DNA from: Octopus sinensis
Taxonomy: Eukaryota
Length of the DNA stretch: 52,091 bases
Assembly (NCBI RefSeq): GCF_006345805.1
Contig: NW_021834430.1
Coordinates: forward strand, 1-52,091
Reading direction: 5' to 3'
Shown: positions 1 to 20,990 of the stretch, piece after piece
Numbering within the stretch: the stretch's first letter is position 1
Layout of the letters: every line of letters begins with the position of its first letter
Notes under the pieces: generated by a model
Database searches by the model: none
What the model saw: only the letters and a program-made list of their open reading frames with translations
Told to the model about the DNA's origin: nothing
Made by a program: the position numbers and the translations under genes

Positions 1-16
1 CAGATGTATTAGTTTG

Positions 17-95
17 GCGCTCGGGAAGGTGAGAAAGTCTTTTACGTTTCGAGCCTACGCTCTTTAGCAGAAAGGAACACGATGAAATAAACAGA
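17..95 (-). mobile_element. Penelope-type terminal repeat fragment with decayed hammerhead ribozyme motif
   Basis: Minus strand reads CTTT-CTGCTAAA-GAGC-GTAG-GCTC-GAAA-CG-TA-AAAG. Stem II and a 4-bp stem I are intact, but the core is CUGCUAA instead of CUGANGA. Downstream sequence (TTCCCGAGCG..TAATAC) resembles the copy at 14661-14790. Confidence 0.5.
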
Positions 96-99
96 GAGA

Positions 100-151
<52 letters not shown>

Positions 152-339
152 ATATATATATTTTGATCTTAGTGATTTCAAAGTTTCGGTCGGTATGTTA
201 ACGCATTCAAATTATTCATTGATTTTATGTCAATAAAACATTCGTTTAACTACACACACACACTACAGATTTTTTAAAATTCTTTACTTGTTTCAGTCAT
301 TGTGCTGCGGTCCTGGATTCTGTGGTCCCCTGTCCCTAG

Positions 340-485
340 ACCAAAACGGTGGTCCGTCACAAGGATATTCATTCTTGCCACCTGAGTGGACTACTAAAGA
401 ACACAATGCATCACCCGGTCCAGGAATCGAAACCACAATCTTATGATCAGGAAAGCAACACCCTAACCGCTAAGCCAAAAGCTCC
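340..485 (-). mobile_element. tRNA-derived SINE family D, internally deleted
   Basis: Reverse head GGCTTAGCGGTTAGGGTG..GGTTTCGATTCCTGGACCGGG with A/B boxes; matches 19320-19470. Confidence 0.7.
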
Positions 486-624
486 GCCCCGGTGGTTTCA
501 TAACGGTGAGTGTGTGAACGTGTGTACATTCTGCGTCAGTTAAGAAACAGTGACGAGTGAAAGTTTTGTAAATAAAATTATAAGCTATCGACATATATGG
601 TTTCAAATTTTTGTCACACGGACA

Positions 625-1290
625 GCTTAGGGGAGGTTGGGACGAGTCGATTACATCGACCCCAGTATTCAACTGGTACTTATTTTATCGACCCCGAAAG
701 AATGAAAGGCAAAGTCAACCTCGACGGAATTTGAACTCAGAACGTAGCAACGACGGGTGGAATTCCGCTAACTATTTCATCCAGCTCGCCGCCTTTTTGT
801 GTTCGCCATATATTCTTTTCTATTCTAGGCACAAGGCCCGAAATTTTGGGGGAGGGGCCTGTCGATGAGATCAACCCCAGTACATAATTGGTATTTAATT
901 TATCGACCCCGAAAGAATGAAAGGCAATGTCGACCTCGGTGGAATTTGAACGCAGAACTTAAAAAGCTGACGAAATGCCGCTATGCTAACGATTCTGCTA
1001 GCTTACCGCCTTTTTGTTTTCGTAATATATTGAGCATGGAAAATAGTTTAGTATGAGGGCAGATGTAAAGCGTCGAGATGGCAAAATCGTTAGCAAAATG
1101 CGTAGCGGCATTTCGTCCGTCTTATACGTTCTGTGTTCAAATTTCGCTAAGGTTGACTTTGCCTTTCATCCTTTCAGGGTCGATAAATTAAGTACCAGTT
1201 GTGCACTGGGGTTGATGTATCTACTTACTCCCTCGTCCGAACTTGCTGGCTCTGTGCCAAAACTTGAAACCAATATTAAGGCAAATAAAC
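625..1290. mobile_element. Three SINE family A copies (two minus, one plus)
   Basis: Conserved GAGTTCAAATTCCGCCGAGGTCGACTTTGCCTTTCATCCTTTCGGGGTCGATAAA core seen at more than 20 places in the window. Confidence 0.85.
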
Positions 1291-1339
1291 CCCCGACGGA
1301 AAAATATATGGCCATTAGTTACACGTGAGAACCCACACA

Positions 1340-1730
1340 TCTCATCTTTTACTTGTTTCATTCATTTGACTGCGGACATGCTGGGGCACCGCTTTGAAGA
1401 GCGTTGCGTCGAACAACTCGGTCTCAGGACTTAAATTTGTTAAAGCTTGACATTCATTCTATCGGTTTCTTTTGCCGAACCGCTAAGTTACGGGGACGTA
1501 AACACACCAACACCGGTTGTCAAGCGGTAGGCAGGGGGATAAACACAGACACAGGGACACGCACACGAATAGATATATACATACATATATATATACGACA
1601 GGCTTCTTTCAGTTTCCGTCAACCAAATCCACTCACAAGGCTTTGGTTGGTCTGAGACCAGAGCAGATGACACTTGCCCAGAGTGCCTCGTAGTGACACT
1701 GAACCTGGAACCATGTGGTTCGAAAGTGTG
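1340..1730 (-). mobile_element. SINE family B (bipartite, internal microsatellite)
   Basis: Reverse complement of 4325-4740 over about 390 nt. Confidence 0.85.
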
Positions 1731-2056
1731 TTTATCAAAGAAAACAGTAAGCGCATTTCTATATTGATTCGTTATTTTCTTCTTCCTCCTTGTTCTCTAT
1801 TTCCCTGTCTTTCTCCTCCTCTTTTTGTCTTTGTGCATACGGACCATGAAAAATCAGAGAGAAACCATGTTCCACTTGATGGACAGTCGTCGTCGTTGCC
1901 AACGTCAAGAGACAATCATCTCCAACAACGATTAATTGAGCCACTAAACATGTGATTACTTCTGACATTGACTGACAAAAAATTACGCAAAATTTAAAAC
2001 AAACAACAAAAGCAGCGACGACAAGAACCACAAAAAAAAACCACACGAAAAAACAG

Positions 2057-2075
2057 CACCACCACCACCACCACC

Positions 2076-2132
<57 letters not shown>

Positions 2133-2136
2133 AATA

Positions 2137-2175
<39 letters not shown>
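2057..2175. repeat. Compound (CAC)n(CAA)n(TAA)n microsatellite
   Basis: Read directly from sequence. Confidence 0.95.
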
Positions 2176-2362
2176 GGATAATAATTTGTAAATCAGTCAT
2201 TACGGACAGTATGTCGTTAAACAATGTTAATAATATATAATGGCGATGTGGTTGAAGGTATTTTTGACTGAATCTTTCCCGTTGAGGTCACACAGTGGTT
2301 TTGTGAGAAGTTCACACCACAGTCACTGAATAATACAACACAACATTAAAGGATAGTGTTAT

Positions 2363-2393
<31 letters not shown>

Positions 2394-2401
2394 ACACATA
2401 C

Positions 2402-2433
<32 letters not shown>

Positions 2434-2601
2434 TATATGCGTGTATATGTATGAATGAATGTGAAGATATGTCTGTCTAAAATATGATATAGTCCTTTAA
2501 AAATAAAACATCGTTACTTCAGTTCTCATATTTAGTTCATAAAACAAGGTCAAGCCATACACACACACACACCCACACACATACAAACATAGACATATAT
2601 A

Positions 2602-2669
<68 letters not shown>

Positions 2670-2831
2670 ATATATATATATATATATATATAGATTTCCG
2701 TTTAACCAGCTGTTAGAACTCAATATACTTATGTTTTAGAGCGTTAGTCAAGTATAGAGAGTAATGTTAATTAATAATTAATGAATCACAAGAGAACAGG
2801 TGTCACGTAATCACGTTCAATAGCCTAGATC

Positions 2832-2931
2832 TGTTTCTGCAATAAAATACTGTTCACTCAGAGCTGAGTGCTTGTGTAATATCCTATAGCTTCCTCGGAG
2901 CCTGAGTGCACAGAATCTTATTGCAGAAACA
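2832..2931. repeat. 100-nt imperfect palindrome (hairpin or small MITE)
   Basis: Arms 2833-2861 and 2902-2930 are complementary at 26/29 positions, with a 40-nt spacer. Confidence 0.8.
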
Positions 2932-3520
2932 ACTGTAAATTAATAAATGCGATGATATAACTCTTCTTCCCATTTCATATATATATATATATGTGTGTGT
3001 GTATGTGTGTGTATGTATGTATGTATATATATATATATTTGAAGATAAGCATATTATAATATGTGATATAAGTCCTTTAAAGGTAATAAATTGTCACGTC
3101 AATTTCATTCTTACGTAGGTAAGTAAAGAAAGACAGAGTGTACAGCTTTGGTAATCGTCTGAAGATCACTTGCTTTTTTTAATTTTAAACTCGTATAAAA
3201 CTTGAATTAACGATGTATTACATTTAAAGGACTATATCACTTGGAATTCCATCAATTTTAAGAATGTACTATAGCATCTTCATATGATGAATTCAGCGGG
3301 AAGAGAAATGTATATGTGGTGGCTTTCAATGCTTTCTTATTGGTATTAATGACATACATAATGCGGATTAGCTATTTGTATTTACATATTTTCAGATTGC
3401 TTAAACAGGAGAGGAATAAAGGGCATAGAAAGATGGCGGCATTAATAAAGTGACATGAAATGTGCTAACCACAGCCGTCTCTATTCCTTCCCAATAAAAT
3501 GGCGTAGATGCAAAGCCTAC

Positions 3521-3693
3521 CTTATCTTCCGAAATTTCTTCCGTGATACGGGTCGTCTGTCGCTACCTCTACACTCCCTGCCATCAGGGCCACATACAAA
3601 TGTGGCTTCGATTCCTTTTTCAGATACTCTCCATTCAAATTCCACCCGTTCTCCATCCGCTAGGCTTCGGAATCCGGATTTGTGAATGACAGA
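3521..3693 (-). CDS. lin28: LIN-28 internal coding exon (C-terminal half of cold-shock domain plus basic linker)
   Basis: Translates to SVIHKSGFRSLADGERVEFEWRVSEKGIEATFVCGPDGRECRGSDRRPVSRKKFRKI plus AG of Arg, co-linear with LIN28 SKLHMEGFRSLKEGEAVEFTFKKSAKGLESIRVTGPGGVFCIGSERRP. Polypyrimidine tract and TTTTCCAG acceptor (phase 0), AG|GTAGGC donor (phase 2); 173 = 57x3+2 nt, no stops. Confidence 0.93.
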
Positions 3694-3867
3694 CTGGAAA
3701 ACAAAACAAATGATAAAAATAAAGTATTCAATATTATTCAGAAAAAATATTTCTAGAAAAACTTTTCGAGATTTTTAACGGAATAATAAAAAAATAATAA
3801 TAATAATAATCGATTACACCGACTACCCCGCTCCTTAATTACCAGTCTTGTGCTGAAATTTGAGACA

Positions 3868-3900
<33 letters not shown>

Positions 3901-3904
3901 ATTG

Positions 3905-4290
3905 AGCTTGCAGAATCGTTAGCATGCCGGAAAAAATGCATTAGTGACATTTCTTCCGACTTTATGAGGTTGACTTAGCCTTTCATCCTTTTGGGGTTAA
4001 TAAAAAACGTACCAGTCGAGCGATGGGATAGGTGTAATCGACTGACCCCACTTCCAAAAAAATCTGAGGCCTTGTGCCTATAATAAAAAGAATTGGCAGC
4101 AAGCTGGCAGAATCGTTAGCACACCGTGCAAAATGCTTCAACGCTCTGAGTTCAAATTTCGTAGAGGTCGACTTTGTCTTTCATCCTTTCGGAGCCGATA
4201 AAATAAGTACCAGTTGAACACTGGAGTCGATGTAATTCACTTATATCCGAAACTTGCTGGCCTTGAGCCAAATGCGAAACCATAATTGTT
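3905..4290 (+). mobile_element. Two adjacent SINE family A copies
   Basis: Heads GAGCTTGCAGAATCGTTAGCA and AAGCTGGCAGAATCGTTAGCA plus the family A core. Confidence 0.85.
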
Positions 4291-4324
4291 GTTGTTGTTG
4301 TTGTGATCAATAAATATCCTTATC

Positions 4325-4740
4325 AGGAGTGGCTGTGTGGTAAGTAGCTTGTTTACCAACCACACGGTTCCGGGTTCAGTCCCACTGCGTGGCACCTTGG
4401 GCAAGTGTCTTCTACTGTAGCCTTGGGCCGACCAAAGCCTTGTGAGTGGATTTGGTAGACGGAAACTGAAAGAAGTCCGTCGTATATATGTATATATATA
4501 TATATATATATGCGTGTGTGTGTTTGTGTGTCTGTGTTTGTCCCCCTAGCATTGCTTGACAACCGATGCTGGTGTGTTTATGTCCCCGTTACTTAACGGT
4601 TCGGCAAAAGAGACCGATAGAATAAGTACTGGGCTTACAAAAGAATAAGTCCCGGGGTCGAGTTACTCGATTAAAGGCGGTGCTCCAGCATGGCCGCAGT
4701 CATATGACTGAAGCAAATAAAAGAGTAAAAGAGTAAAAGA
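4325..4740 (+). mobile_element. SINE family B, full length
   Basis: tRNA-like head (GGCTGTGTGGTAAG..GGGTTCAGTCCC), CORE-like CCTTGGGCAAGTGTCTT, central (TA)n(TG)n, second half ending in (GTAAAAGA)n. Confidence 0.9.
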
Positions 4741-5486
4741 GTTATCAAATTTTGAAGACTTTTAACGTAGATACAATGGCATAACCTTCGAAACCGAGAG
4801 ACGATCGATATTTTGTATTTTCTACGGGCTAAGTCTGGAGGAAGGGACAGGGCCCACGTCCATAATGGGTACTTTATTTTATAGACTTCGGGTGGATGAA
4901 AAACATAAAGACAAACACAGCAAGAATTTAAACCCAGGACGTAAAGACACACGTAAGTTGACACCACAAGACATTTCATCCATCGCCCCCCCCCCATACA
5001 CACACACATTCTAATACCCACCACTACCGTCGATAAGAACAACAACAACAACAGCAAAAGAGGGATGTTCATAAAAAAGGGTGAGGGGTGCATAGTGGAG
5101 ACCAATTTTAGAGCGGAAATGTTAGACATGGATGAAATGTTTGAAAAAAATACCTGACCTCATTTCGTATCAATTTTAACCTTTCTGTCTAACCCAAAGG
5201 AAAATAAAGATAAATAGCTCGTGTTACACATCGCTATGCGGGCAGGAGTTGGCAGGATCGGTAAAAAATCATTGAGTATTAACGCACGTCATTTTACGTT
5301 CTGTGTTCAAATCCCATTCCAGGATCAAACTTGTTTTAGATCTTCCTTGTGCTGTGTGAGGATCGGTTTGTCAAAGAACAAACCCAACGTTTCCTCTGCG
5401 CATCATAAAAAGGCGACTAAATGAGGTTGAGGAGAAAGGACTTGCATTTCGATCTCACAAAACCTTCACCAGCAACGACAAAGTAG

Positions 5487-5860
5487 AGGCGCAATGGCCC
5501 AGTGGTTAGGGAAGCGGACTCATGCGGTTTCGATTCCCAGACCGGGCGTTGTGTGTGTTTATTGAGCGAAAACACCCAAAGCTCCTCGAGACTCCGGCAG
5601 GGCGTGGTGGCGACCCCTGTTGTACTCTTTCGCTCTAACTTTCTCTCACTCTTTCTTCCTGTTTCTTGTCTCCGACTTCTTCCTACGCAACCTCTGAGCC
5701 TGGATACGCATTCATCCATCCGTCGATGCTCTCGGTGTCGGGGGTTGACCTGCTTTCTCTTCTGCAGGTCTTACGAATAGCAAAGGACCACATTTCGGAC
5801 TTCTCCCACTGCGAGCACTGGGACGAAGACCAGTTCGCTCAACAAACAAACAAACAAACC
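5487..5860 (+). mobile_element. tRNA-derived SINE family C with (AAAC)n-ending tail
   Basis: GAGGCGCAATGGCCCAGTGGTTAGG..GGTTTCGATTCCCAGACCGGG head; body shared with 6660-6824 and 7950-8143. Confidence 0.8.
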
Positions 5861-6019
5861 AGCAACGACAACCCAAGACAGATCCACGGGCTAGAGGGTT
5901 GTCGCCCGAGTGATGCTAAGGCGTCATCCGCCAGGAACAAGGAATCACCAACGAATGGTGGATGCGGCAGCACACTGTTACAGCTCATGCCACATATTTA
6001 AAAAAAGCCCTTTCAGTCA

Positions 6020-6345
6020 TGAATGACCATGGGATTGCACCTAGAAAGTTCCCATCCGAGGCACTAGTCTGGGCAAGGTTGTTTATGGAAGACCAGCAGT
6101 CGTCCGTGCATATCAGCCTCTGCTCTCCATGCCACGGATGTTAACCAAAAGAAAGGCAAAGGGGCCGATACAGCTTGGCATCAGTGACGTCACAACTCAT
6201 TTCTACAGCTGAGTGAACTGGAGCAACATGAAATAAAGTGTCTTGCTCAAGAACACAGCATACAGCTCGGTCCGGGAATCGAATTCACTACCTCATGATT
6301 ATGAACACGACCCTCTAGCCACTGAGCCATTTGCCTTCATATGCC
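6020..6345 (-). mobile_element. SINE family D (CORE-like) with RTE-like tail
   Basis: Reverse head, TTCTTGAGCAAGACACTTTATTTC..CACTCAGCTGTAGAAATGAG CORE-like domain, distinct 3' tail. Confidence 0.75.
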
Positions 6346-6569
6346 ACATATTACTACTACGACTACTTGGGAATAAACTTAGTTACTGTGAAGTACATCC
6401 TGTGGTTGCATTTCTACAACGAAATGTGTCGCCTTCTTTCTGTTACTGACCACAGTTAGCCACCACACCCGTGCTAACAGTCGGTGTGCGAGTGAAGGGC
6501 CTTTATTAGTTAGCAGTAAATGCTGTTTGGCAACTGCGCGAAGCGCAATATCTATGACAAGAAAATTAT

Positions 6570-6824
6570 TTATTTATTTATGCGCCCTTTTCAAGCCTAA
6601 TCAGGCTCATGGGCCCGGTTTCCCGGTTTCTGTGGCATATGTGCTCCCCCCGGAGGAGAGAGTGAGAGAAAGTTGGGTCAAAAGAGTACAACAGGGGTCG
6701 CCACCACCTTCTGCCGGAGCCTCGTGGAGCTTTAGGTGTTTTCGCTCAATAAACACACACAACGCCCGGTCTGGGAATCGAAACCGCGAGTCCGCTGTCC
6801 CAACCACTGGGCTATTGCGCCTCC
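6570..6824 (-). mobile_element. SINE family C joined to GAAACCGGGCCCATGAGCC tail
   Basis: Family C head and body; tail matches 19220-19285. Confidence 0.75.
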
Positions 6825-7174
6825 TGTGACAAGAAAATATTGAAACATTTCTTTTAGGAATTCATGATCTGCTTTTTCTCGTTCTTGCCTCGAACTCATG
6901 TAATTTCTGAAAACCTGTGTCTTTTAGAATTTAAACACATTGAAATTAAGTACCAGACATATACTGGTTCCGCGCGCGCGCGCGCGTGTGTGTGTGTACA
7001 GTGAGAGACATACACACAGGTAGACAAACAGACAGAGATTACGTGTATATGTGTATGTGATATCGAAAGTGAAAAAGCAAATACGAAATACTTCCCAACG
7101 GCTTACTAAAACAGCCACTCTTCCATTCCTCCTCCTCCTACTACTAATAATAATAATAATTTTTTATTTAGGCA

Positions 7175-7550
7175 CAAGGCCTGGAATTTGTGGGGAAGGG
7201 GATAGTCCATCAGATCGATCCCAGTACTTGATTGGTAGTTAACTTATCGACCCCGAAAGGATGAAAGGCAAAGTCGACCTCGGCGGAATTTGAACTCAAA
7301 ACGTAAAGACGGACGAAATACCACTAAGCATTTTTGACCGGCGTGCTAACGATTCTCCCAGCTCACCATTTTATTAACAATAATACTAAATGCACAGGCC
7401 TGAAAATTTGGGGGAGGGGGCTAGTCGATTATATCGACGTCGAAAGAATGAAAGGCAAAGTTGACCTCGGCGGAATTTGAACTCAGAATATAAAGACTTA
7501 TGAAATGCCGCAAAGCATTTTAACGATTCTGCCTGTTCGCCGCCTTAATG
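7175..7550 (-). mobile_element. Two SINE family A copies
   Basis: Reverse family A core present twice. Confidence 0.85.
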
Positions 7551-7724
7551 ACAATAATAATAATTTTATCATATATATTGGGGAGCAGGCATGGCTCTGT
7601 AGGTTAAGATGGTTTGTTTGCAAACATTTTGTTTAAGTTCGATTCATGTGTGCGAGAAAATTTATCCATCAGATTTATATCTGACTGTACCTGTTTGTGC
7701 CCATTTATGTAAATAAGTGTAATA

Positions 7725-8277
7725 CCGTAATTCCTCACGATATCGCGGTTCATCTACTGCTGTTCACCTATCGCGGTTTATTATTTAAGCTTACGTCAAT
7801 TCCTCTGTGGTGTTGTTTTGCATTTATAATAAAATAAATATATCACCGTGACCGACCAGGCTATCATATGTTGTTACACATCGCTGGTCACAATGCGCTT
7901 CGCATTGTTTTAGCCTTCAAATGACGCCACCCCGCTGGCTAAGCGAGCAGGCCAACAGAAGAAAGAGTGAGAGAATGTTGTGGCGAAAGCGTACAGCAGG
8001 GATCACCACCACCCCCTGCCGGAGCCTCGTGGAGTTTTAGGTGTTTTCGCACAATAAACATTCACAACGCCCGGTCTGGGAATCGAAACCACGATCCTAC
8101 GATCGCGAGTCCGCTGCCCTAACCACTAGGCCATTGCGCCTCCAAAATAAATATATACAAATTATAAAAATAATTTTAAAAAAACAATATACAGTACAGT
8201 ACTGTTTCTACTTCGAGGATTTTCAGTTATCGCGGAGGTTTGGGAATGTAATACCCGCGATAGTCGAGGGATTGCTG
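7725..8277. mobile_element. Tigger/pogo-like MITE
   Basis: Imperfect TIRs (CCGTAATTCCTCACGATATCGCGG and CCCGCGATAGTCGAGGGATTGCTG) with TA flanks at 7723-7724 and 8278-8279. Confidence 0.7.
7844..8143 (-). mobile_element. SINE family C, full length, nested in the MITE
   Basis: 13-bp TSD AAAATAAATATAT at 7831-7843 and 8144-8156; tRNA-like head TGGAGGCGCAATGGCCTAGTGGTTAGGGCAGCGGACTCGCG. Confidence 0.9.
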
Positions 8278-9126
8278 TACTTGAAAGTATTTATGCCACT
8301 AAAAGAATATAACGCAATGAGTGATGTGAATAGAGTCAATATAAGTGAGTAAAACCATAGCATGGTCGCTGTCATGTGACTGAAACTGGTCGACAAAAAG
8401 TACACACACGCGCGCGCGCGCATATACACGTCAACATGGCCGGGTGTTCTCAGTCGCCAGACTCAAGGCGTAATTCCTTTATCCAGGACAAAGAGTATTC
8501 TGATCCACGAATGCCCGTCGTGACAACATTTTTTTTTAGATAACGGCATTGCCCCAGCATGGCTGTAGCTCTCAAACCGAAACTAGTAGATATATACAAC
8601 ACACACACACACACACACATGTATATAATTACTACGTGATGGACAATGCGACGACGGCGAACATTACCGCCATCGTTACATCCTCAATTACCGTTAATAC
8701 CCTCGCCTTCACAAACAAAAATATCCCATAATCCAATATTTTATCTACGATTACAAGCAACGGTGATTATATTTTAAACATTAATGATCAACAACAAACA
8801 TGGCCGCCATATCATCTTTGTATGATTAGCGCATATCATTAAATTGCTTCTTGTTACAGCTGTCGTCGTCGGCGTTATTGTGTATGTGTGTACGTGTGTG
8901 TGTGTGGATGTAAGACGGAAATACAAACACACACAAATAAATATAAATATATGTGTGTATGAGAGAGAGAGTGTGTGTGTGTGCGAGTGAGTGAGTGAAT
9001 TTGTGCGTAAGCCTGTCATACATGTATGTCTTTATATATATATATCATGTATGTATATACATATATAAATATGTAATGTATTATATACATGTGCATACAT
9101 ATATATATATACAAGTATGTATATAT

Positions 9127-9215
9127 AGGACCTCCGTAATGCCATGATGGACCGTGAAGTCTGGCGTAGCATGGTAAACTCCATTGTCTCGACCACGGTC
9201 GAACAATGATGATGA
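9127..9215 (+). mobile_element. RTE-clade LINE 3' end fragment
   Basis: Translates DLRNAMMDREVWRSMVNSIVSTTVEQ* followed by (GAT)n; typical RTE C-terminal DR..WR..V motif. Confidence 0.65.
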
Positions 9216-10464
9216 TGACAATGTATGTGTGTGTGTGTGTGTGCATGTGTATTTTTGTCGTACACCATCGCTTGAAGCCAGGTGTTGGTTTGTTTACGTC
9301 CACATAACTTAACAGCTGGTAAAAGAGTCCGATTGGGTAAGTATGAGAATTCTTATTTAAAAAAAAAAAAAAGCCCTGGAGTTGATTTGGTTTATGTGGT
9401 CGACTAAAATCGTTCAAGACGGAGCTCCAGTATGGCCGCACTCCAATGAGTGAAACAAGCAAAAAGATCAAACGATAAAAAAAAACAAAAACAAACAAAC
9501 AAACAAGAAAGATGTATCTTTAACAGAATCAACGTGGTCGTGTTTAAGTTGCGATTTAACATTTTTTTTTAAGTGGAAAAGAGTCGAAGAATTGCAGTAC
9601 ATGTGGCCTATTTCGAAAGTAAGTAGCAGCAGCAGCAGTAACTGCATCAATGCAAGTAACAACAGCAACAAAAGAGGCAAAAAAAATTAAATGATAATAT
9701 TTAAAAAGAAAAAAATGGCTGTTGCTTTTGTCATCGTTTATCGCTGTGCCATTTTCTGCCCTGCTAAATTTGGCTGCTTACTGTTGCGACTGATGCTGCA
9801 GTTATTGTTGTTGCTGTTGTTGTTGTTGCTGCTGCAGCAGTAGTAGTAGTAGTAGTAGCAGTAGTTGTAGTATTTATTTTTGTTGTTGTTGTTGTTGCTG
9901 CCGCTGCTGCTGCTGCACCAAATGCGCCGTACGCAAGAAATAGCTCGACATTCAACGTTACAATTTGCTGTCCCACATCGCTCGTCCTTCTCCCTCCTCT
10001 CCTCGCCCCTCCTCTCTTCTTACTTTTAAAGTTGGTTCTATTCTTAAAGACAAAACAAAACAAAAAAAACCCAAAAAACAAACCTAAAAATAAAAAATAA
10101 GATAAATATTGGTTTTAAATATAAGAACAGGACCTTGAATCTAGAGAAATGTTATCAGAATCGTTTACACAGACCCCAATATGGTATTGTTATTTTATTT
10201 TATCGACCCCTGGGAAAGTAAAATGGAAACTTGACCTCAACTGAATCTGAACTTTGAACCCAGAGCAGGAAAAGAATATCGCAATTTAGAGAAGGGTTAT
10301 GGTTACAATCGATTATGTAGAACCTAATATGGTATCGTTGCTTTGTTTTATCGACCCCAGGAAGAATGAAAGGCAAACTTGACCTCGATTGCAGTTGAAC
10401 TTTGAACATAGGACATAAAGAGCTGATAGAACTACTGTCGAATATTTTGGCCGCGTCTTTAACG

Positions 10465-10695
10465 CAGTGGTTCTGGGCCCATATGACCCGAGGGGATCCA
10501 TGGAAGACTTTGTTGTTAAAATTTATGTGCATTATATTCGTTGACAAAAATATTTTAATATTTTCTATACAATTCCTAAGAAATTTAATTAAAAAAATAT
10601 AAGATTTTTAAAAACACCGAATGACTATCAGAGTCTACCCGAATAAACAAGGAATCGAATGGAGCCATACGTAAAAATAGGACTGAGAACCACTT
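10465..10695. mobile_element. hAT-type MITE
   Basis: CAGTGGTTCT / GAGAACCACT termini; 8-bp flanks CTTTAACG and CTCTAACG (7/8 match). Confidence 0.75.
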
Positions 10696-10834
10696 CTCTA
10701 ACGGTTCGACCAATTCCCCACCCTTATTGCGTCTAAAATAACCACAAAGCTAGAAATTAGTTGCAGAGTGATTAGTAGGTTAAATCGCCCCAGTAGGTGA
10801 CTGGTACTCTATTGTATCAACAGTAAAAAGCAGA

Positions 10835-11225
10835 AGGCGGTGGAATGGCAAAAATGTTAGCACGTCGAGCAAAATGCGTAGCCGTATTTCGTCTGTCGTT
10901 ACGTTGTGAGTTCAAATTCCGCCGAGGTCGACTTTGCCTTTCATCCTTTCGGGGTCGATAAATTACGTACCAGTTACGCACTGGTGTCGATGTAATCGAC
11001 TTAATACCTGTGTCTGTTCTTGTTTGTCCCCTCTATGTTTAGTCCCTTGTTGGTAATAAAGAAATAGGTATTTTGTCTGCCGCTACGTTCTTTGTTCAAA
11101 TTCCGCCGAGGTCGACTTTGCCTTTCATCCTTTCGGGATTGATAAATTTAAGTATCAGTTGCGTACTGGGGTCGATCTAATCGACTGGCACCCTCCCCAC
11201 AAATTTCGGGCCTTGTACCCAGAGT
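10835..11225 (+). mobile_element. SINE family A dimer
   Basis: Full head, then tail re-entering the body at AAAGAAATAGGTATTTTGTCTG. Confidence 0.85.
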
Positions 11226-11929
11226 ATAAAAAAAAGCAGTAAAAATCAGAGTTGATCTTTGTGGGATTTGAATTTATGACTTAAAGAGTCGGAACAAATA
11301 ACGCCAAGTATATTATGTTCGAGGCTTCACCCTTTGACAGCCCAAAGCATTTTCATAAGTTTGTCATAAACTTCCAGGCTCGTTTGTAGGCTTTTAGCTC
11401 AGCTCCTTTTTCTTTTTCATATGTTCATGTAATATAAATTTCTAAGCTTGGTGATTGAAAAAGTTGAGAATGATATCACATATGATGCAAGGACGCTGAG
11501 GAAACATGTTCCGTGTTTTACAAGTGATACACGAGAGAGGCAAAAGGGTAAAACAACTGGGAATGTACATCATATCTGATGCATGGACGCTAGGGAAATA
11601 TGTCCTGTGCAATTCTCTCGTTGGTTCCAATGTCTCTCGGTGGTGATATTTGGTTTCGACTCTCCGAGCTGGGAGTTCAAATCCCTCCAAGATCAACTTT
11701 ACATTTTATGTTTGCGGAGGTCGGGGAATACAAAAAAGAAAAAAAAGAAAGGGACCGATCCAAGACTTGCCCTGCAGTATTTGTTCCGGATCTTTGCGTC
11801 GTGAGTTCAAATCCTGTCACAGCCAGCAAAGCGTGATATTTCCACTGCTACACCGTGGAAAGTGGGTAACCAGCCCAACGAGTTCCTGGACACGAGATGG
11901 ATATTATTTTTAGTAGGCACAGTTCAGAT

Positions 11930-12478
11930 ATGTGGTTCGCAACCAAGAACCAAAACCTGGATTTTTTTTAGGGGGCTGCACCTCAAAAATGCAAAACAAA
12001 TGTCAGCAAGAGCACTCAGAGAGCGAAAACCTCAGCCAAGGCAACACCAACGTCCTCTCAACAATTAGCCAGGGGTGATTTTTAAAATGAGAATATCTGA
12101 AATAAACTCGACTGCTCTCACAAACGAGAATATTAGAAATGAACCTGACCGCTCTCAAAAATTAAGTAAAAAAACAGGAAAAATAATCCAGAATTCTTGT
12201 CTGATACCAGATTGAACCCAAAATCTACTCAGTTTGTGCCATTTATGAGGCCAAACATCCCTGAAAGTTTCATCTGAATCCATCCAGCGGTTCTTGAGTT
12301 ATCTTGTGCATGGACAAGTAACCAACCAAACACGACTGAAAACTATAACCCTGCCATCGCTAAAGCAGAGGTAATAAAAGAAAGTTTATTATATTTATAG
12401 AAAGAAGGCCGTCGAAGGCCACAGGAAAGATGCTTGAGAGCTGCATGCGGCCCTATGAGCTACGGTTGAGAACCGCTG
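11930..12478. mobile_element. Probable hAT-type MITE interrupted by a Helentron-like element
   Basis: TGTGGTTCGCAACC left end, GGTTGAGAACCGCTG right end; flanks GTTCAGAT and GCTTAGAT (6/8 match). Confidence 0.5.
11997..12378 (+). mobile_element. Non-autonomous Helentron-like element (HINE type)
   Basis: Starts CAAGAGCACTCAGAGAGCG..CCTCAGCCAAGGC, contains AAAGTTTCATCTGAATCCATCCAGCGGTTCTTGAGTTA, ends GCAGAGGTAATAA. Second copy at 26575-26862. Confidence 0.6.
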
Positions 12479-12854
12479 GCTTAGATGCTCTCTCTCTCTC
12501 TCTCTCTCTCTCTAACGCTTTTCAAATAAGTACAACCAGATTATCCGGCAACGCTGCCTACGATGGAAGAATATAGCCCCTACACAAAGGTGCAAAGAAG
12601 GGATGGAAGGGAGGAGACTCATGTCTCATCCGATTCACGCAATATCACAGGGGCTAAATGCAAGCCCTTCCTCTACTTTACCTAGCAGGAACCAAACATC
12701 AAACCCAGCCAGCCCTTACTCCACCCAGCGGGCTTACAAGTAGGAGGTATTTATAATATATATTACATTCCTGGCAGGTGAGTTTAGTAGATTAGAACGT
12801 CAGCTTCCGGCAGCCTGCAGGGTAAGCATCGCTTCATTCATTCATATGTATAGG

Positions 12855-13565
<711 letters not shown>

Positions 13566-13754
13566 TGAATACACGTACATACTTGGTGAATACTCATGTT
13601 TGCGTGGAGCCACTTTTAAAGTATCTTAATATACACACACATATACACTCAGATATATATGCTTGTATATATATCCATATACATATGTGTGTCTGTGTGT
13701 ATACGTATGTATGTATGTCCGAATGTTTTAATGCCCTCTACTGCGTTTTTATTC

Positions 13755-13785
<31 letters not shown>

Positions 13786-14119
13786 AGCTTACATATTTAT
13801 TCACACATACATGAACACACACATATGTATGTGTGTGCATGTATGTGTGTGCATGTATGTGTGTGCATGTATGTGTGCGTTTACAGGAAATAGAATGATA
13901 CTCGGTCGAAAACAAAAAAGATATGCTAAGATATAATGGAAGAAAAAGACTATTGGGGGAAAGGGTGGGAGAAGCTTTAGACAAACGCGAAGAGAAAGAG
14001 AGAGAGAGAGAGAAAGAGAGAGAGAGGGGGAAAGGAGGAGAGAGATAGTAAATATTTGATAGTAAATAATTAATACCTTGTAAGTTGTCTTTCTACTAAG
14101 GGAAAATATTTTTAGTAAT

Positions 14120-14191
<72 letters not shown>

Positions 14192-14416
14192 TAGTAGTGA
14201 TGGTGGTGATGGTGGTATGTATGAATGTGTTTTGATGAGGACATAAAAAATACAGGAACATCCAGAGAGGTTGCGACATCGACAGATAAGTGCGAGGTGC
14301 GTGTTTATATATACAGATGCATGCATACAATTAACACACACACATATACACATGCATGTATATACATATACGTATGGTCACAGCCTTTCGGTTGAAGCAT
14401 ATAAAAGAAATAAAAG

Positions 14417-14447
<31 letters not shown>

Positions 14448-14561
14448 CGTGCCAACGCACGAAAATCTAGGACCTTGGGTCATTCTTTTGCTTCTGCTAA
14501 ATATTAATAAAGATTATACATATATATATGTATATATAAATACATATATATATACGCACAC

Positions 14562-14598
<37 letters not shown>

Positions 14599-14629
14599 TA
14601 TATACATATATATACATATATACACACAC

Positions 14630-14660
<31 letters not shown>

Positions 14661-14661
<1 letters not shown>

Positions 14662-14790
14662 TTTTCCGACGAAGAGCTCCGCTCGAAACGTTAAACCCTC
14701 CTTCTTTCCTGAGCGTCCAATAATACTATATTTGTTCCACGTCCTCGCGTTGTAGTTTTTTTTTTTGTGCTTTCTTGTTTGGATTAACTT
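14661..14790 (+). mobile_element. Penelope-type terminal repeat with minimal hammerhead motif
   Basis: TTT-CCGACGA-A-GAGC-TCC-GCTC-GAAA-CG-TT-AAA; embedded between (TA)n arrays. Confidence 0.6.
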
Positions 14791-14796
14791 TATATA

Positions 14797-14879
<83 letters not shown>

Positions 14880-15526
14880 TGGCTGCCCTCTCGTTATCGA
14901 GTATGGCCATTGCGCGAAGCTTAATCAATGTTGTTATCGTGCAATGCCTGTGCAAGAAGATTTTTTTTAAAGTGAGGAAAGGCTCTGCACTGAGTCAATC
15001 TCACTCACGAAGGTTTTATGTCGGAGTTATCCCAGTTACCTGAGTTACCTTCTCCTAGAAGGATGCCCTAACAAAGGCTAGGAGTCCTTCACTCCCAATG
15101 GTTTAACCGCGCGATCGGGTATTACATTACGTTCGTATGGGTAGGAGATAGTTCTGCAGGAGGAAATACCTGTGATAGGAATCCTGTCTAACTTACTTAG
15201 CGACAAGAATTTGCGTAGGATGATTGAAATATGTGATGCCAACTGAATTGCTGCAGCTGGGCAAAGCGTTACGGACGGGCTAAGTAACGGAGTGACAAAG
15301 GAAAATTAAATCATCTGAAGCCAGGACGGAAGATGCCGTTAGCTCACACACTGCCACCCTTTCTTTGTTTACGGTGCAGGTTGGACCAACTGGTCTTACG
15401 CGTGTTGTCATTAAGACCGACAACATAAGGCCGACTAGATTATCCTCGTTCGATTAACAGGCGAACAATACACAGACACACGTATATACATACCTATACA
15501 CACGCGCCTAAAGCTACAACAACAAC

Positions 15527-15768
15527 AAAAAGGTGGTTGTAGTACCAATAATTGTCGGATCCCTGGGAACAGTGAGCAAAAATCTTGAGAAGTACATGGA
15601 ACAAATAGGGGCTGCAATAAGGGTGGAGCACTTGCAGAAAATAGCACTGCTTGGAACCGCTCGAATACTCCGGCTGGTACTCGAAAACTAAGGGGTGTTA
15701 CCTTAGTTCACTAGTAGTGAACAGCTGACACCGTGGTACATCTCCAGCGTTAGAAGCTGGGCAAAGGC

Positions 15769-15818
<50 letters not shown>

Positions 15819-15822
15819 TAAC
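15527..15822 (+). mobile_element. 5'-truncated R4/Dong-clade LINE (RLE endonuclease C-terminus, 3' UTR, (AAT)n tail)
   Basis: 15527-15691 translates KKVVVVPIIVGSLGTVSKNLEKYMEQIGAAIRVEHLQKIALLGTARILRLVLEN*, the typical VP..IG.LG and LQK..LLGTARIL end of R4-like ORFs. (AAT)n from about 15769. Confidence 0.8.
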
Positions 15823-16099
15823 GTTAATGACAATGGTGATATCATTATAATGATAATAGCGGTGGGACTAATTGCAATGGTAACGATAATATTAATTATG
15901 GTTTCTTTAATAACACAAACGGTTTGCGTTTAGAAAACATTAAAGATGGTACCGGACGAAACAGTGTGTGTGTGTGTGTGTGTGTGTGTGTCTGTGGTTG
16001 CAATCTGCTGTTTGGATTATTGGAAATCTTAAAATGCACAGGGGGTGTTATTAATAGGTCAGTTAAAATAAGGATCAAATGCTCGCATTTTTATACTTA

Positions 16100-16838
16100 A
16101 AACCGATTCTATAAAGTCTTTTCCGAGTGATAGACACGTCTCTATAACTCTGCGATATAAACCTTAATTATTAGTAATAAGATTCATGGATTGTATTTAG
16201 GTAGCCTAGCATCTCTTAATACTTTTAATACGTATAACTGATCGCATTTAAATTACTTTTGCCCTCCCTTACTTCTACCAACAGACAACTGTATTTTCAT
16301 ATAACTGTAATTCCTATAATCTCAATAATCTTATGAATTTTACTTTGTCACTCCGCTACTTAGCCCGTCCGTAACGCTTCTACGTGATTAGTTGAAGGAG
16401 ATGAAGGGAAGCGGATGGTGAGAGATGGAGATGGAAATGGGAGGGGAGATAGAACTGGAGAAGGAGAGGTGGTGGTGTGTGTGAAATGCGTAATTTTTTA
16501 AACTAAGTTTTTTTTCCTCCTTTTTTAGCCCGTCTGTAGCGTTTTCACGTGATTAGTTGAACGGAAATGCGAACAGCGAAAGGAAAAGGCGGAGAATGAG
16601 AGAGAAAGAGGGAGAGTGCTGTGTATTAAGACTATTAAATTGTGAATAAAGTATATAAAGTGCATTAAGTAATCCTCGTTTTCGAATTTCCATCTCGTTT
16701 CAATGAGTAGCAGGTGAGCGACTATCTTTTGATGCAGACTCAACACAGTCTACGCTTTCAGGTTTTTGGGATAAAGTTTTGAGAAATAACCCAATAAGTT
16801 TACCATTAATCCCGTGAAATATTCACAGGTTCCGCTAG
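16100..16838 (+). mobile_element. Non-autonomous Helitron (5' end uncertain)
   Basis: Subterminal hairpin CCCGTGAAATATTCACAGG followed by CTAG-T at 16835-16839; internal duplication of AGCCCGTC..CGTGATTAGTTGAA. Confidence 0.6.
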
Positions 16839-17780
16839 TTTCTATAATTCAGTTTAATAACTTTAATCACATTGTTTCCAGCTTTATGGCATTTGTTTCA
16901 TCATCTCTAGTTACGGCTTTTAAAATTCCTTATAATCCCATACCTTTGAACATTTATTAACATTCATGGCCGCTACGATTCATTATAATTCATATCAATT
17001 CTTCTAACATTTTCTTATTACTCACCTTAATTTTTAATTATAATAATAGTGATTTAATTATCTACTGAACCTATATGATTTTAACTAATTTATTTTATGT
17101 TCAATATTAATAGAAACGTTAGGATTCATACTTTTTCGTATTTTTTGTTTGTTTTTTATCGGGCATAGATACTCTTTTACTCTTTTACTTGTTTCAGTCA
17201 TTTTTGACTGCGGTCAAGCTGGAGCACCGCCTTTAAAAAAAATCTAGTCGACGAGGATTGGTTCTAGTTTTCGTTCTCTATTATAATTGGCCTTTCAACT
17301 CGTAATTTCATTACAGTTAAATAACTAATCTCAAGAAATTTCTATAAATCCCGATATTTAACATACATTTATATTTTTATGCTGACGCGGATTATTGCCT
17401 AAACTCCTTCCATTAGTCTAATATGCACATTTATTTGCTTCGGCCGTCTTTCTACCAATGTGTTAACCACTTTAATTATTTGATTTATTCTATTCTGTCT
17501 CTAAATGTTTATAGGTTATAGTTTCTGGCACTGTGATTATGGCTATCTCCATATATCTATAATTTTTTCTCCTTTTCTTTGCTCACCTTCCTTGCTCTCC
17601 CTCTCTTCTGGATTTTCGCAGAGACGTTCGCTAATGCGCTATTTTTCTTTTCTTTTTTAATTATCTTTAACTGGATCTCTATGAATTAAATCAAATATTC
17701 TATTAGTTCTGCGATAATTAATCGGTGTACTTTAATCAAGATAAATTTAGTTAATAAGTAACGTTAAAATTTATTAAACA

Positions 17781-18178
17781 CTAGCAGTATCGCCCGGCGT
17801 TGCTCGGGTTTGTAAGGGAAATAACTATATAAGCATTTTTAGAGAGTTATAGGCAAAAAATAGCAAAAAAATGCATTAAAAATGGAAAAAAAATGGTGGT
17901 AAATTTTTTTTTAAATCGTTAACTCATCGTAGACATTTTTAGAGAGTTACTTCCCTTATATAATAGCGAAAAAATGCATTAAAATGGAAAAAAATGATGG
18001 TAATTTTTTTTTTAGATCGTAGACTCATCGTAGACGCGCGCTAATACCCAGAAGGGCTCGATATGAATCACGACTATAAGATATCCGCTTTTGGTCAAAC
18101 TGCACCGCAAAATGTGGGAGTAGTTAGGAATCTAAATCGTAGGAGACAGACACACAACCTCTCTTTTATATATAAACA
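17781..18178 (-). mobile_element. Non-autonomous Helitron
   Basis: Minus-strand 3' end CCCGAGCAACGCCGGG hairpin plus ATACTGCTAG-T; 5' end TTTATATATAAAAG; internal tandem duplication of about 100 bp. Confidence 0.8.
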
Positions 18179-19103
18179 TGTCACACCTTGACGTACAAAA
18201 CCTTAAAACACCGTAAATGACTTTTTAAGAACAATGTCAGCAGCTGTCTTAGAACACGTTTCGATCGGGTCAAACGTATGCTTGGTGCTTGCCATCTGCC
18301 AGGATACAAGCATGTTTTGCTCGTTCCAGCCCTTACAAGTGAGGCTGCTACGTTTAATGATATCCTTATGATAGAAATGTCTTTATTCTTTAATTTACAA
18401 CCTCATTCAATTATCCACCCTCATGAGTGACGAGTGACACACTGTAGTCCTACCCACTTTACATTTCACAAATGTTATTAGAGACTTCTCCTGTTGATGA
18501 TTTGTTTTTTTTTATTTTTTATTTTGGTAAAGCCGATGAGTTGAAAGTTGCGTAGCATATTAGGTAATCTGATGGGTATGGTGCATACTGCATACTTGAC
18601 TCTACCGTATTTACATTGCAGTAAACACTTCTAAGGAAGCCAGTAGCACATATTCCAGTTGTCTGTTTTCTGGCTTCACGCCGCGCTTAAGTTTCCATTC
18701 ATCGCTGAATACTTTTGGAGTTGTGGATTACCAAACAACAGTAAACTCCTCCTCACCGATGCATTCGGTACTTTTATATCCTTCTACACGTTGGATATAC
18801 AGATTTCACGAAGAGGGGACAGTCATGACTGTCTTCACACGACGTACTTCAAATTACTCCACTAAACTCGATACCCCAATAAATACAACTTTCAACGATC
18901 TCTACGGCTTCTTACGATTCCCACGAAATCTCAACCACTCCTATGACTTCTCTTTCGTCTCAGCCAAAACGCTACTTTTCATAAGAGCTCGACTTGTCCA
19001 TTCTGCCCATCCCACAGGCGGGGGTCAATGACTCTCGCCGCAACAAGTACTATGACAATGGATTACTTAACTTATCTGTCCCATTTGCGCCCTTCTCTCT
19101 AAC

Positions 19104-19680
19104 CCAGTGGTTCTCAACGGGAGTAGGGTCCATATGACGCTTGGGGGTTGGTCCATATAAGATTTTGTAGCTAAAGCCTGTGTGTGTGCTAAGTCGGTTA
19201 TATTTCTACAATAAATAATAAATAAATAAATAAATGCGCCCTTTTTAAAGCCAGGCTCATGGGCCCGGTTTCTAAGGCGTATGAGTTCCCGAGCTGGACG
19301 GGACGCCAGTCCATCGCAGCGTTACTCATTTTTGCCAGCTGAGTGAACTGGAACAACGTGAAATGAAGTGTTTTGCTCAAGAACACAACGCGTCACCCAG
19401 TCCAGGAATCGAAACCACAATCTTACGATCATGATGCTGACACCCTAACCACTAAGCCACGTGCCTCCACTCATATTCCTACGATGCATAAAGATATTTT
19501 AACAATTTTTCTTTATACAATTCCTAATAATACTTACTCTTTTACTCTTTTACTTGTTTCAGTCATTTGACTGTGGCCATGCTGGAGCACCGCCTTTTGT
19601 CGAGCAAATCGACCCCAGAACTTATTCTTTGTAAGCCTAGTACTTATTCTATCGGAATCTTTTGCCGAACCGCTAGATTA
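19104..19680. mobile_element. hAT-type MITE remnant interrupted by SINE D (19215-19470, minus) and SINE B fragment (19535-19680, minus)
   Basis: CAGTGGTTCTCAAC start; body segments match the 10465 MITE on both sides of the SINE D. Confidence 0.65.
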
Positions 19681-20281
19681 CCAATAATTGTGCCGTGCTT
19701 CACTTCGATATGCTTCGATCTTTTATGGATCCCTGTCCCCTGTAATCAAACATAAAGCTGTCGATTGGCCAGGACGTTAGAGCGTCCCATAGAGAGTAGT
19801 GGGATATTCTTTTTGACTCTCTACACTCTGCGTTCAAATCCCACCGATGTCAACTTTGCTTTTCGTATTTTCGGGGGTCGGTAGAAAGGCAACTGATACT
19901 GTTGAACTCCACAGCTTGATTGGTACTTTATCGAACTTGAAAGGATGAGGGGGGAAAATTAAACACAGTGTGATTCGAACTCAGAATAGTAAGACTTGGA
20001 AGAAACGGCCGTAAAGCAATTTTCCCATACTTTCCAACACTAACAATGCTAACAATAACAACAACAACAACAACGATGTTGATGATAATACACCTTTCTA
20101 CAATAGACACAAGACCCGAAATTTTTTTTTTGGTGGTGGGGGGGGGGAGCAGACTAGTCGATTACATCGACCCCCGTCTTTCACTGCTACTTAATTTATC
20201 GATCAACTCCGAAAGGATGAAGGACAAAGTCAATCTCGGCGGAATTTGAACTTAGAATGTAAAGACGGACGAAATGCTGTT

Positions 20282-20749
20282 ATGGGTTCTACATCTTTTT
20301 AATATTCTGCTCAATACCACAGATTTGCTTGTCAGCTGTTTGACCATAACGAGTTGAGCATGTCCCTTAGTGGCTGACGATATGTGCATCTCTGATCACG
20401 AGCAGAAGTAGTCGGGGAGCATCATAGTCATGTGTTGAGAGGGGATCTTTGAGGATTGAATAATTCACCTTTGGAAACATAGGTGTTTCGTTCAACATCT
20501 TTAAACAACCCTCATTCAGGGACCTTTTGAGCAGGATGGGTTATTCTACCTGAAGAAAATTCTAACAGGCCCCCACCTGCAAGGTCATGCGCTGTTTATC
20601 TTGATTTGAGATCACCATGTCGCGCACATATGGTTGTGATGCATGTGCCTGGTGTGCCCTTATCAGTCGGATAGTCATGATGGGTATATTGGGCTTCGTG
20701 TATTTTACCCCAGTGTCACTTTGATGGCATGCACTGCTCTCTCACTCAA
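20282..20749 (-). repeat. Interspersed non-coding repeat of about 550 bp, truncated copy
   Basis: Reverse complement of 37596-38050. Confidence 0.85.
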
Positions 20750-20990
20750 TAATAATGATGATGATGATGACGATGACGATGATGACGATGACGATGATGA
20801 CGATAATGCACAGCCATGCAAATTTTATAAAGAAACGAAAGAAAATCGTCCCAAATCGCCCCACTCTCACACAGAAGCAGACAAAAAATGTGCGTGCTTG
20901 CATGAAAGAATATAATTTTAATTCGATATCTACGTACGATCATACACACATCCACACGCATCTCTTTCTTTTATTTGTTTCCTTCTTTTT

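What the first reader, a model, noticed from the sequence alone, without database searches (positions are those of the whole stretch)
3521..3693. Hidden LIN-28 exon with vertebrate-like intron positions
Seen: an open 173-nt minus-strand exon with strong splice signals, absent from the ORF track. Established: LIN28 combines a cold-shock domain with two CCHC knuckles and blocks let-7 maturation. From memory, vertebrate LIN28 exon 3 also begins after HQ in phase 0 and ends within the Arg before CYNC in phase 2. Inference: an ancestral bilaterian exon structure kept in a cephalopod.
Basis: partly seen in the sequence, partly recalled or inferred. Interest (0 to 1): 0.7.

Follow-up and report, generated by a model that had tools for sequence, protein, structure and literature searches.

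The report
Internal LIN28 exon, ordinary conserved introns
This is a real internal coding exon of the animal's LIN28 gene, an RNA-binding regulator of let-7 microRNA, and its two intron positions match those in vertebrates, molluscs, annelid-like and arthropod genes, which is expected for a conserved gene.

Summary
Window 3521..3693 (minus strand) is a 173-nt open segment. It is bounded by a pyrimidine tract and cag| on one side and AG|gtaggc on the other. It enters in phase 0 and leaves after base 2 of an Arg codon.

The peptide is SVIHKSGFRSL...RRPVSRKKFRKI(R). It forms the C-terminal half of a cold-shock domain plus the basic linker typical of LIN28. Human LIN28A matches at E 1e-10, against 1.6e-5 for Y-box proteins. 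A LIN28 profile finds this segment at E 7e-27 and nothing else in the 52 kb.

The same two boundaries occur in three vertebrate-type genomic contigs (exons of 185, 185 and 188 nt, covering LIN28A residues 77-138). They also occur in about 20 invertebrate genomic contigs. In relatives the flanking exons end ...VFVHQ| and begin |CYNCG.

Three limits apply:
- Only this one exon lies in the window. The upstream exon is more than 48 kb away and the zinc-knuckle exon more than 3.5 kb away.
- "Cephalopod" could not be verified. The closest named relative is a bivalve, at 76% identity.
- Conserved intron positions across bilaterians are a well-known general pattern.

This is useful for annotation but not surprising.

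The parts
3521..3693 (-). Internal coding exon of a LIN28 orthologue. It is 173 nt, phase 0 in and phase 2 out, and encodes SVIHKSGFRSLADGERVEFEWRVSEKGIEATFVCGPDGRECRGSDRRPVSRKKFRKI plus the first two bases of Arg. That is the C-terminal half of the cold-shock domain followed by the basic CSD-to-knuckle linker.
   Evidence: Pfam CSD positions 31-64 of 66. PDB LIN28A at E 1.2e-10. LIN28 HMM at E 7e-27, positions 59-120 of 203. pN 0.16-0.17 against pS 0.83-1.0 versus the closest relatives.
3694..3720 (-). 3' splice site of the upstream intron: a pyrimidine tract (20 of 25 Y) followed by cAG.
   Evidence: An ag| sits at the homologous position in all 17 genomic LIN28-type metagenome loci, in L001, L007, L011 and L092, and in the three vertebrate-type loci.
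3513..3520 (-). 5' splice site of the downstream intron: AG|gtaggctt. An in-frame TAG follows directly if the donor is not used.
   Evidence: The homologous (A/C)G|gt donor, after base 2 of the last Arg codon, is present in all compared genomic loci.
3694..52091 (-). At least 48.4 kb of the upstream intron. It is repeat-rich and contains no LIN28 exon and no LIN28B-type promoter element.
   Evidence: tblastn, regex and HMM searches found no CKWFNV...VFVHQ exon. The promoter motif from PMC10735318 is absent. Rfam gave 0 hits.
1..3520 (-). First 3.5 kb of the downstream intron. The CCHC zinc-knuckle exon is not reached.
   Evidence: No CYNCG or C-X2-C-X4-H-X4-C match on the minus strand in 1..3520. 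In relatives that exon lies 0.6-4.2 kb downstream.

Best explanation
The segment is the penultimate-type internal coding exon of this animal's LIN28 gene. It corresponds to vertebrate LIN28A residues 77-138. It encodes the last beta-strands of the cold-shock domain, including the conserved GFRSL aromatic residue (F84 in human numbering), and the Arg/Lys-rich linker leading to the first CCHC knuckle. After splicing it should join an upstream exon ending ...DVFVHQ (phase 0) and a downstream exon beginning (N)TGY TAY AAY TGY GG, that is CYNCG (phase 2). The product would be a cold-shock-domain plus two-zinc-knuckle protein. In studied animals this protein binds the terminal loop of pre-let-7 and blocks its maturation. 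Three points are shown here: the exon, its boundaries and phases; its LIN28 identity; and the homology of both intron positions with vertebrate-type, mollusc-like, annelid-like and arthropod-type genes. Three points are inferred: that the missing exons exist outside the window; that the junctions are used; and that the protein acts on let-7.
For: LIN28 is favoured over Y-box proteins by about 5 orders of magnitude in E-value. The LIN28 profile hit is E 7e-27. In the alignment with relatives from molluscs to vertebrates, the 20 invariant columns include GFRSL, E15, F19, GS, RRP and the terminal R, and the window carries each of them. The linker RRPxSRKKFRKIR is the one that precedes CYNCGEFANH in full-length invertebrate LIN28. 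Synonymous sites are saturated (pS 0.83-1.0) while pN is 0.16-0.17 against the closest relatives, which indicates long-term purifying selection. Identical boundaries are seen in L001 and L007, in L012-L024 and L026-L029, in L011 and in vertebrate-type L008, L094 and L093. Spliced sequences L025 and L030 read VFVHQ-SVI...KIR-CYNCG straight through. In relatives with enough flank, the neighbouring exons are a CSD N-terminal exon ending CAT CAG|gt and a knuckle exon starting ag|N TGY TAY AAY.
Against: Only one exon of the gene lies in the window. No cold-shock N-terminal half and no CCHC knuckle was found in 52 kb, so the complete LIN28 architecture is not demonstrated for this genome. No transcript evidence was available. 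No protein more than 81% identical exists in the 5.8-billion-protein collection, so no annotated orthologue from the same lineage confirms the gene model.
Confidence: 0.9

Rival explanations
1. The segment is an exon of a different cold-shock-domain gene (Y-box protein, CSDE1/UNR, CARHSP1-type) rather than LIN28.
For: The Pfam match is only to the generic CSD family, at 25 bits, below the 27-bit cut-off because only half a domain is present. Y-box proteins are also hit.
Against: LIN28A scores 44.5 bits against 28.5 for the best Y-box protein. The match to LIN28 runs through the linker (query residues 2-52), which Y-box proteins lack. All close database relatives are LIN28-type, and the full-length ones continue into CYNCGEFANH.
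Confidence: 0.02
2. The segment is a relic exon of a decayed or partially deleted LIN28 gene, or a duplicated solitary exon, and is no longer expressed as LIN28.
For: No other LIN28 exon lies within 48 kb upstream or 3.5 kb downstream. The surroundings are almost entirely repeats. No matching annotated protein exists.
Against: The frame is intact, both splice sites are canonical, and every invariant residue is kept. pN is far below pS. A closely related mollusc-like locus (L092) also has more than 10 kb of intron upstream of this exon, so long introns here are not unusual.
Confidence: 0.06
3. The segment is an exon of a LIN28-derived, knuckle-less paralogue like P0011, P0013, P0014, P0016 and P0019. 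These proteins share the SVIHK(A)GFRSL start but have no CCHC knuckles.
For: These proteins are 71-74% identical to the exon and share SVIHK, which is unlike the arthropod SVIQM.
Against: In those proteins the linker diverges (...RRPxSxEKFQNKP...) and reads on without the KIR| break. The window keeps the canonical RKKFRKIR ending and a phase-2 donor, exactly as in knuckle-bearing genes.
Confidence: 0.02

Closest known systems
Vertebrate LIN28A / LIN28B (human LIN28A, PDB 8OPS, 3TRZ, 5UDZ)
   Same: The exon is homologous to LIN28A residues 77-138. Both intron positions and phases are the same: phase 0 after ...VFVHQ and phase 2 inside the Arg before CYNCG. GFRSL, VEF, KG.E, GP.G, C.GS.RRP and the basic linker are conserved.
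   Different: Identity is only about 47-48%. The vertebrate linker is 4-5 codons longer, giving exons of 185 or 188 nt against 173 nt. The start is SVIHK in place of SKLHM.
Mollusc LIN28 ('LN28A-like protein, partial [Mya arenaria]', P0220; P0001, L012 and L013-type contigs)
   Same: These are the closest relatives found, at 76-81% identity. They share the 173-nt exon, the same boundaries and the same RRPMSRKKFRKIR linker.
   Different: Nineteen to 24% of residues differ and synonymous sites are saturated, so this is a distant lineage and not the same genus. In L012 the knuckle exon follows after about 1 kb, whereas in the window it lies more than 3.5 kb away.
Arthropod LIN28 (e.g. 'protein lin-28 homolog [Caerostris darwini]', P0176; P0024, P0026, P0031)
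   Same: Both boundaries are the same and the total coding length is 173 nt.
   Different: The motif is SVIQM and identity is 60-67%. One genome (L011, GCA_905338395.1) has an additional phase-0 intron that splits the 173 nt into 66 + 107.
Y-box binding proteins (YBX1, YBX2)
   Same: They share the cold-shock fold and the C-terminal beta-strands.
   Different: The scores are much weaker. They have no LIN28 linker and no CCHC knuckles. The window exon is not a member of this family.

Membership tests
LIN28 | The best sequence matches are LIN28 rather than other cold-shock proteins. | tested here: met
   PDB: LIN28A at 1.2e-10 against YBX2 at 1.6e-5. LIN28 HMM at E 7e-27. The named hits are lin-28 homologues.
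LIN28 | Cold-shock domain, C-terminal half. | tested here: met
   Pfam PF00313 positions 31-64 of 66. It aligns to LIN28A residues 78-128.
LIN28 | Cold-shock domain, N-terminal half (CKWFNV, KGFGFI, VFVHQ). | tested here: inconclusive
   It is not present anywhere in the window. The window ends 48.4 kb upstream of the exon, so the gene may simply extend beyond it.
LIN28 | Two CCHC zinc knuckles after the linker. | tested here: inconclusive
   None was found in the 3.5 kb available downstream. In relatives the knuckle exon lies 0.6-4.2 kb downstream.
LIN28 | Basic linker RRPxx(K/R)Kxx(K/R)x(R) that ends at the Arg preceding CYNCG. | tested here: met
   The window has RRPVSRKKFRKI(R). Identical or near-identical linkers precede CYNCGEFANH in full-length proteins.
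LIN28 | Gene structure: a phase-0 intron after VFVHQ and a phase-2 intron in the Arg codon before CYNCG. | tested here: met
LIN28 | The exon is spliced into an mRNA. | not testable with these tools
   No transcriptome of the source organism was available. The 42-aa ORF product is not on record in the contig collection.
LIN28 | The protein binds pre-let-7 and blocks its maturation. | not testable with these tools
   This is a biochemical property. It is inferred only from orthology.
Y-box proteins | A CSD followed by alternating acidic and basic islands, with no CCHC knuckles, and best matches to YBX. | tested here: not met
   YBX hits are 16 bits weaker than LIN28A hits and stop before the linker.

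The most novel reading that the evidence does not exclude
The exon might not be used in a canonical LIN28 protein. It could be a solitary survivor, or it could be spliced into a knuckle-less cold-shock protein like the P0013-type proteins seen in the database. That would mean this lineage has remodelled or lost the let-7 gatekeeper. A milder version is much more likely (about 0.5): a normal LIN28 gene that is missing from current gene models of this lineage and whose cold-shock domain is split by an intron longer than 48 kb.
Probability: 0.06. Interest if true: 0.45.

Novelty: new member of a known kind. Interest (0 to 1): 0.15.

Why it matters
The main value is for annotation. This exon is in no protein of the 5.8-billion-sequence collection at more than 81% identity, so the LIN28 gene of this organism or lineage appears not to be modelled. 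Anyone studying let-7 and heterochronic regulation in this animal would need it. As evolutionary evidence it adds one more gene to the well-established picture that lophotrochozoan and vertebrate genes share most intron positions. It opens no new question.

Tried and rejected
- **Other LIN28 exons in the window.** Nothing turned up besides the exon.
- **Rfam scan of the window.** It gave 0 hits, so no intronic miRNA or snoRNA was detected. ARAGORN found 0 tRNAs.
- **Bilaterian-conserved Lin28b promoter element.** The element from Frith 2023 (PMC10735318, supplementary Fig. S29; GTAATTAG...CATGTAATTG) is absent even with 3 mismatches.
- **Naming the organism.** Five routes all failed.
  - A protein search with a SINE-derived ORF found no candidate.
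  - Exact look-up of the 42-aa ORF found nothing on record.
  - The metagenome scan found no contig above 81% identity.
  - A literature search for SINE sequence strings gave 0 papers.
  - The SINE is absent from all fetched loci.
  The window's low GC content, its many microsatellites and its abundant SINE-like repeats are compatible with a cephalopod genome, but that rests on memory and is not a test.
- **Vertebrate gene loci with introns.** P0144 turned out to be an intronless retrocopy-like ORF. P0098 and P0220 were not on record. Vertebrate evidence therefore comes from three unspliced genomic contigs.
- **Intron conservation.** DNA similarity to relatives covers the exon. In a few loci the alignment also runs about 110 nt into the AT-rich upstream intron at 64% identity, which I do not regard as meaningful.
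- **Literature.** I found no paper on LIN28 intron-position conservation or on cephalopod or mollusc LIN28 specifically.

Full report
**1. What is in the sequence**

On the minus strand the window reads ...atttttatcatttgttttgttttccag|TCT GTC ATT CAC AAA TCC GGA TTC CGA AGC CTA ... TTT CGG AAG ATA AG|gtaggctttg.
- The acceptor AG is at 3695-3694. The exon runs from 3693 to 3521. The donor GT is at 3520-3519.
- The exon is 173 nt, i.e. 57 codons plus two bases. It enters in phase 0 and ends after the second base of an Arg codon.
- Twenty of the 25 bases ahead of the acceptor are pyrimidines.
- The donor matches 7 of 9 consensus positions.
- If the donor is not used, the frame stops at once (AGG TAG).
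- The open frame containing the exon spans only 3774..3520.
- An internal exon has no start codon, so a mechanical ORF list shows only a 42-aa GTG-started fragment (3517..3645), and only at a low length cut-off. That explains why it was 'absent from the ORF track'.

**2. Identity of the peptide**

The peptide is SVIHKSGFRSLADGERVEFEWRVSEKGIEATFVCGPDGRECRGSDRRPVSRKKFRKI(R).
- It matches Pfam CSD positions 31-64 of 66, so it is the C-terminal half of a cold-shock domain.
- Against all PDB chains the best hits are LIN28A (E 1.2e-10, residues 78-128). LIN28B cold-shock-domain constructs come next, and Y-box proteins follow at 1.6e-5 or weaker.
- A full scan of 1.84 billion representative proteins gave 272 hits.
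- The full-length hits read ...CKWFNV.KGWGFI....DVFVHQ-SVIQM.GFRSL...RRP.SKK.FRKIR-CYNCGEFANH...C..C....H....C. That is the cold-shock plus CCHC-knuckle architecture of LIN28.
- A profile built from 17 such proteins hits the window segment at E 7e-27, and nothing else in six frames scores better than E 0.5.

**3. Evidence for purifying selection**

Against the closest relatives (L012, L013, L007), the proportion of synonymous differences is 0.83-1.0, which is saturated. The non-synonymous proportion is 0.16-0.17. In the alignment with relatives from mollusc-like to vertebrate sequences, all 20 invariant columns are retained in the window. This fits a functional coding exon and not a chance ORF or an old pseudo-exon.

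**4. Exon boundaries in other animals**

Many database hits are naive gene calls on unspliced eukaryotic contigs. In these, LIN28 similarity begins right after a Q encoded by the cAG acceptor and ends at the Arg, followed by unrelated residues. I checked the DNA directly.

*Invertebrate genomic loci*
- L001 and L007 have the same cag|TC. start and the same A(T/A)(A/C) AG|gta end.
- Seventeen genomic LIN28-type contigs from the metagenome scan (L012-L024, L026-L029) all have ag| before the first codon and (A/C)G|gt after base 2 of the last Arg codon.
- Sixteen of those 17 have exactly 173 nt. The exception is L029, at 197 nt.
- L011 (NCBI assembly GCA_905338395.1) keeps both boundaries but has one extra phase-0 intron, giving 66 + 107 = 173 nt.
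- Two contigs, L025 and L030, are spliced copies that read DVFVHQ-SVI...KIR-CYNCG/CFNCG straight through.

*Flanking exons in relatives*
- The upstream exon ends CAT CAG|gt in L016 and L026.
- The downstream exon starts ag|N TGY TAY AAY TGY GG in L092, L012, L016, L022 and L026.
- The knuckle exon lies 0.6-4.2 kb downstream of the homologous exon.

*Vertebrate-type loci*

| Locus | Acceptor side | Donor side | Exon length | Type |
|---|---|---|---|---|
| L008 | cag\|AGC AAG TTG CAC ATG | GGA GAC AG\|gtgagc | 185 nt | LIN28A-type |
| L094 | cag\|AGT AAG TTG CAC ATG | GGG GAC AG\|gtacac | 185 nt | LIN28A-type |
| L093 | cag\|AGC AAA CTG GTG ATG | GGA GAC CG\|gtgagt | 188 nt | carries the ...QKRKPKGDR linker |

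- From memory, the ...QKRKPKGDR linker marks L093 as LIN28B-type.
- All three lengths are 2 mod 3.
- The L008 peptide aligns end to end with human LIN28A residues 77-138 at E 4e-31. The vertebrate exon therefore starts after Q76 and ends in the Arg before C139 of CYNCG.

*Named anchors*

Two named proteins anchor these groups: 'LN28A-like protein, partial [Mya arenaria]' at 76% identity, and 'protein lin-28 homolog [Caerostris darwini]'.

**5. What is not in the window**

Only this exon is present.
- The cold-shock N-terminal exon is not within the 48.4 kb upstream (3694..52091, minus strand).
- The knuckle exon is not within the 3.5 kb downstream.
- The bilaterian-conserved Lin28b promoter element (PMC10735318, supplementary Fig. 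S29) is also absent.
- In the mollusc-like locus L092, the intron upstream of this exon also exceeds 10 kb. A long intron at this position is therefore not peculiar.
- The full LIN28 architecture is inferred for this genome and has not been shown.

**6. Organism**

I could not verify 'cephalopod'.
- The best identity anywhere is 81%, to an unnamed marine metagenome contig. The closest named relative is a bivalve.
- No protein in the 5.8-billion collection carries this exon at higher identity.
- The abundant SINE-like repeat has no relative in the protein collection or in the fetched loci.
- The exon groups with the SVIHK and RRPMSRKKFRKIR (mollusc-type) sequences and not with the arthropod SVIQM or vertebrate SKLHM types.
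- A non-bivalve mollusc is therefore plausible. The repeat-rich, low-GC window is compatible with a cephalopod, but that judgement rests on memory only.

**7. Mechanism**

From established knowledge of LIN28 (structures 3TRZ, 5UDZ and 8OPS appear), the cold-shock domain binds the pre-let-7 terminal loop and the knuckles bind GGAG. Together they block Drosha/Dicer processing and recruit a terminal uridylyltransferase. This exon supplies the last cold-shock strands, including the GFRSL phenylalanine (F84 in human numbering by the alignment), and the flexible basic linker. Whether this applies in this species is an inference from orthology.

**8. Verdict**

The finding is ordinary: an unannotated internal exon of a deeply conserved gene, with intron positions conserved as in most bilaterian orthologues. 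It is a new member of a known kind, with low interest (0.15). Its practical value is a corrected gene model for LIN28 in this genome.

Noticed in passing
window, e.g. 33340..33520 (-), 560..900, 23912..24251, 32738..33486: A SINE-like unit of about 100-180 bp (core ...ccgttacgttctgagttcaaattc.accgaggtcgactttgcc.tt.atcctttcggggtcgataaa.taagtaccag...) occurs at least 33 times in 52 kb on both strands. This includes two tandem arrays with periods of 184 and 168 bp. ARAGORN calls no tRNA, and the element is absent from all fetched relative loci.
   Followed up: partly
window 27762..28023, 28701..28903, 31071..31346, 39037..39193, 50732..51276: The window holds very long microsatellites: (TTA)~89, (ATCT)~51, (AGT)~92 with a 42-bp higher-order period, (TATC)~39 and (AT)~270. 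They generate the long low-complexity ORFs and the GC-skew spike at 30-32 kb.
   Followed up: no
L009 505..1251 and L010 680..1426 (protein P0144): This is an intronless 248-aa mammal-type LIN28A open reading frame on two ENA metagenome contigs. It looks like a processed retrocopy with an intact frame and an N-terminal extension.
   Followed up: no
proteins P0011, P0013, P0014, P0016, P0019, P0068: These form a group of LIN28-like cold-shock proteins (RGFCRWFNV...VFVHH-SVIHKAGFRSLGKGE...). They lack the CCHC knuckles and instead carry Gln-rich and PEVTVPVV-repeat tails. Their source organism is unknown. They may be a lineage-specific expansion or mis-spliced gene models.
   Followed up: no
L011 8624..8689 and 9105..9211 (GCA_905338395.1): In this invertebrate genome the homologous 173 nt is split by an extra phase-0 intron after ...EFEYK into 66 + 107 nt. 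The two ancestral boundaries are kept. This is an example of lineage-specific intron gain.
   Followed up: yes
window 3455..3685 (+): A 76-aa ATG-started ORF lies antisense to the LIN28 exon. It has no similarity to anything and is probably a by-product of the stop-free exon on the opposite strand.
   Followed up: no
P0220 (Mya arenaria 'LN28A-like protein, partial') and P0176 (Caerostris darwini 'lin-28 homolog'): Public gene models of LIN28 in these invertebrates look faulty. The Mya model jumps from ...RKIR into the second knuckle (CHNCKSTDHLIADCP). The Caerostris model is an unspliced call of this one exon with intron-encoded residues at both ends.
   Followed up: partly
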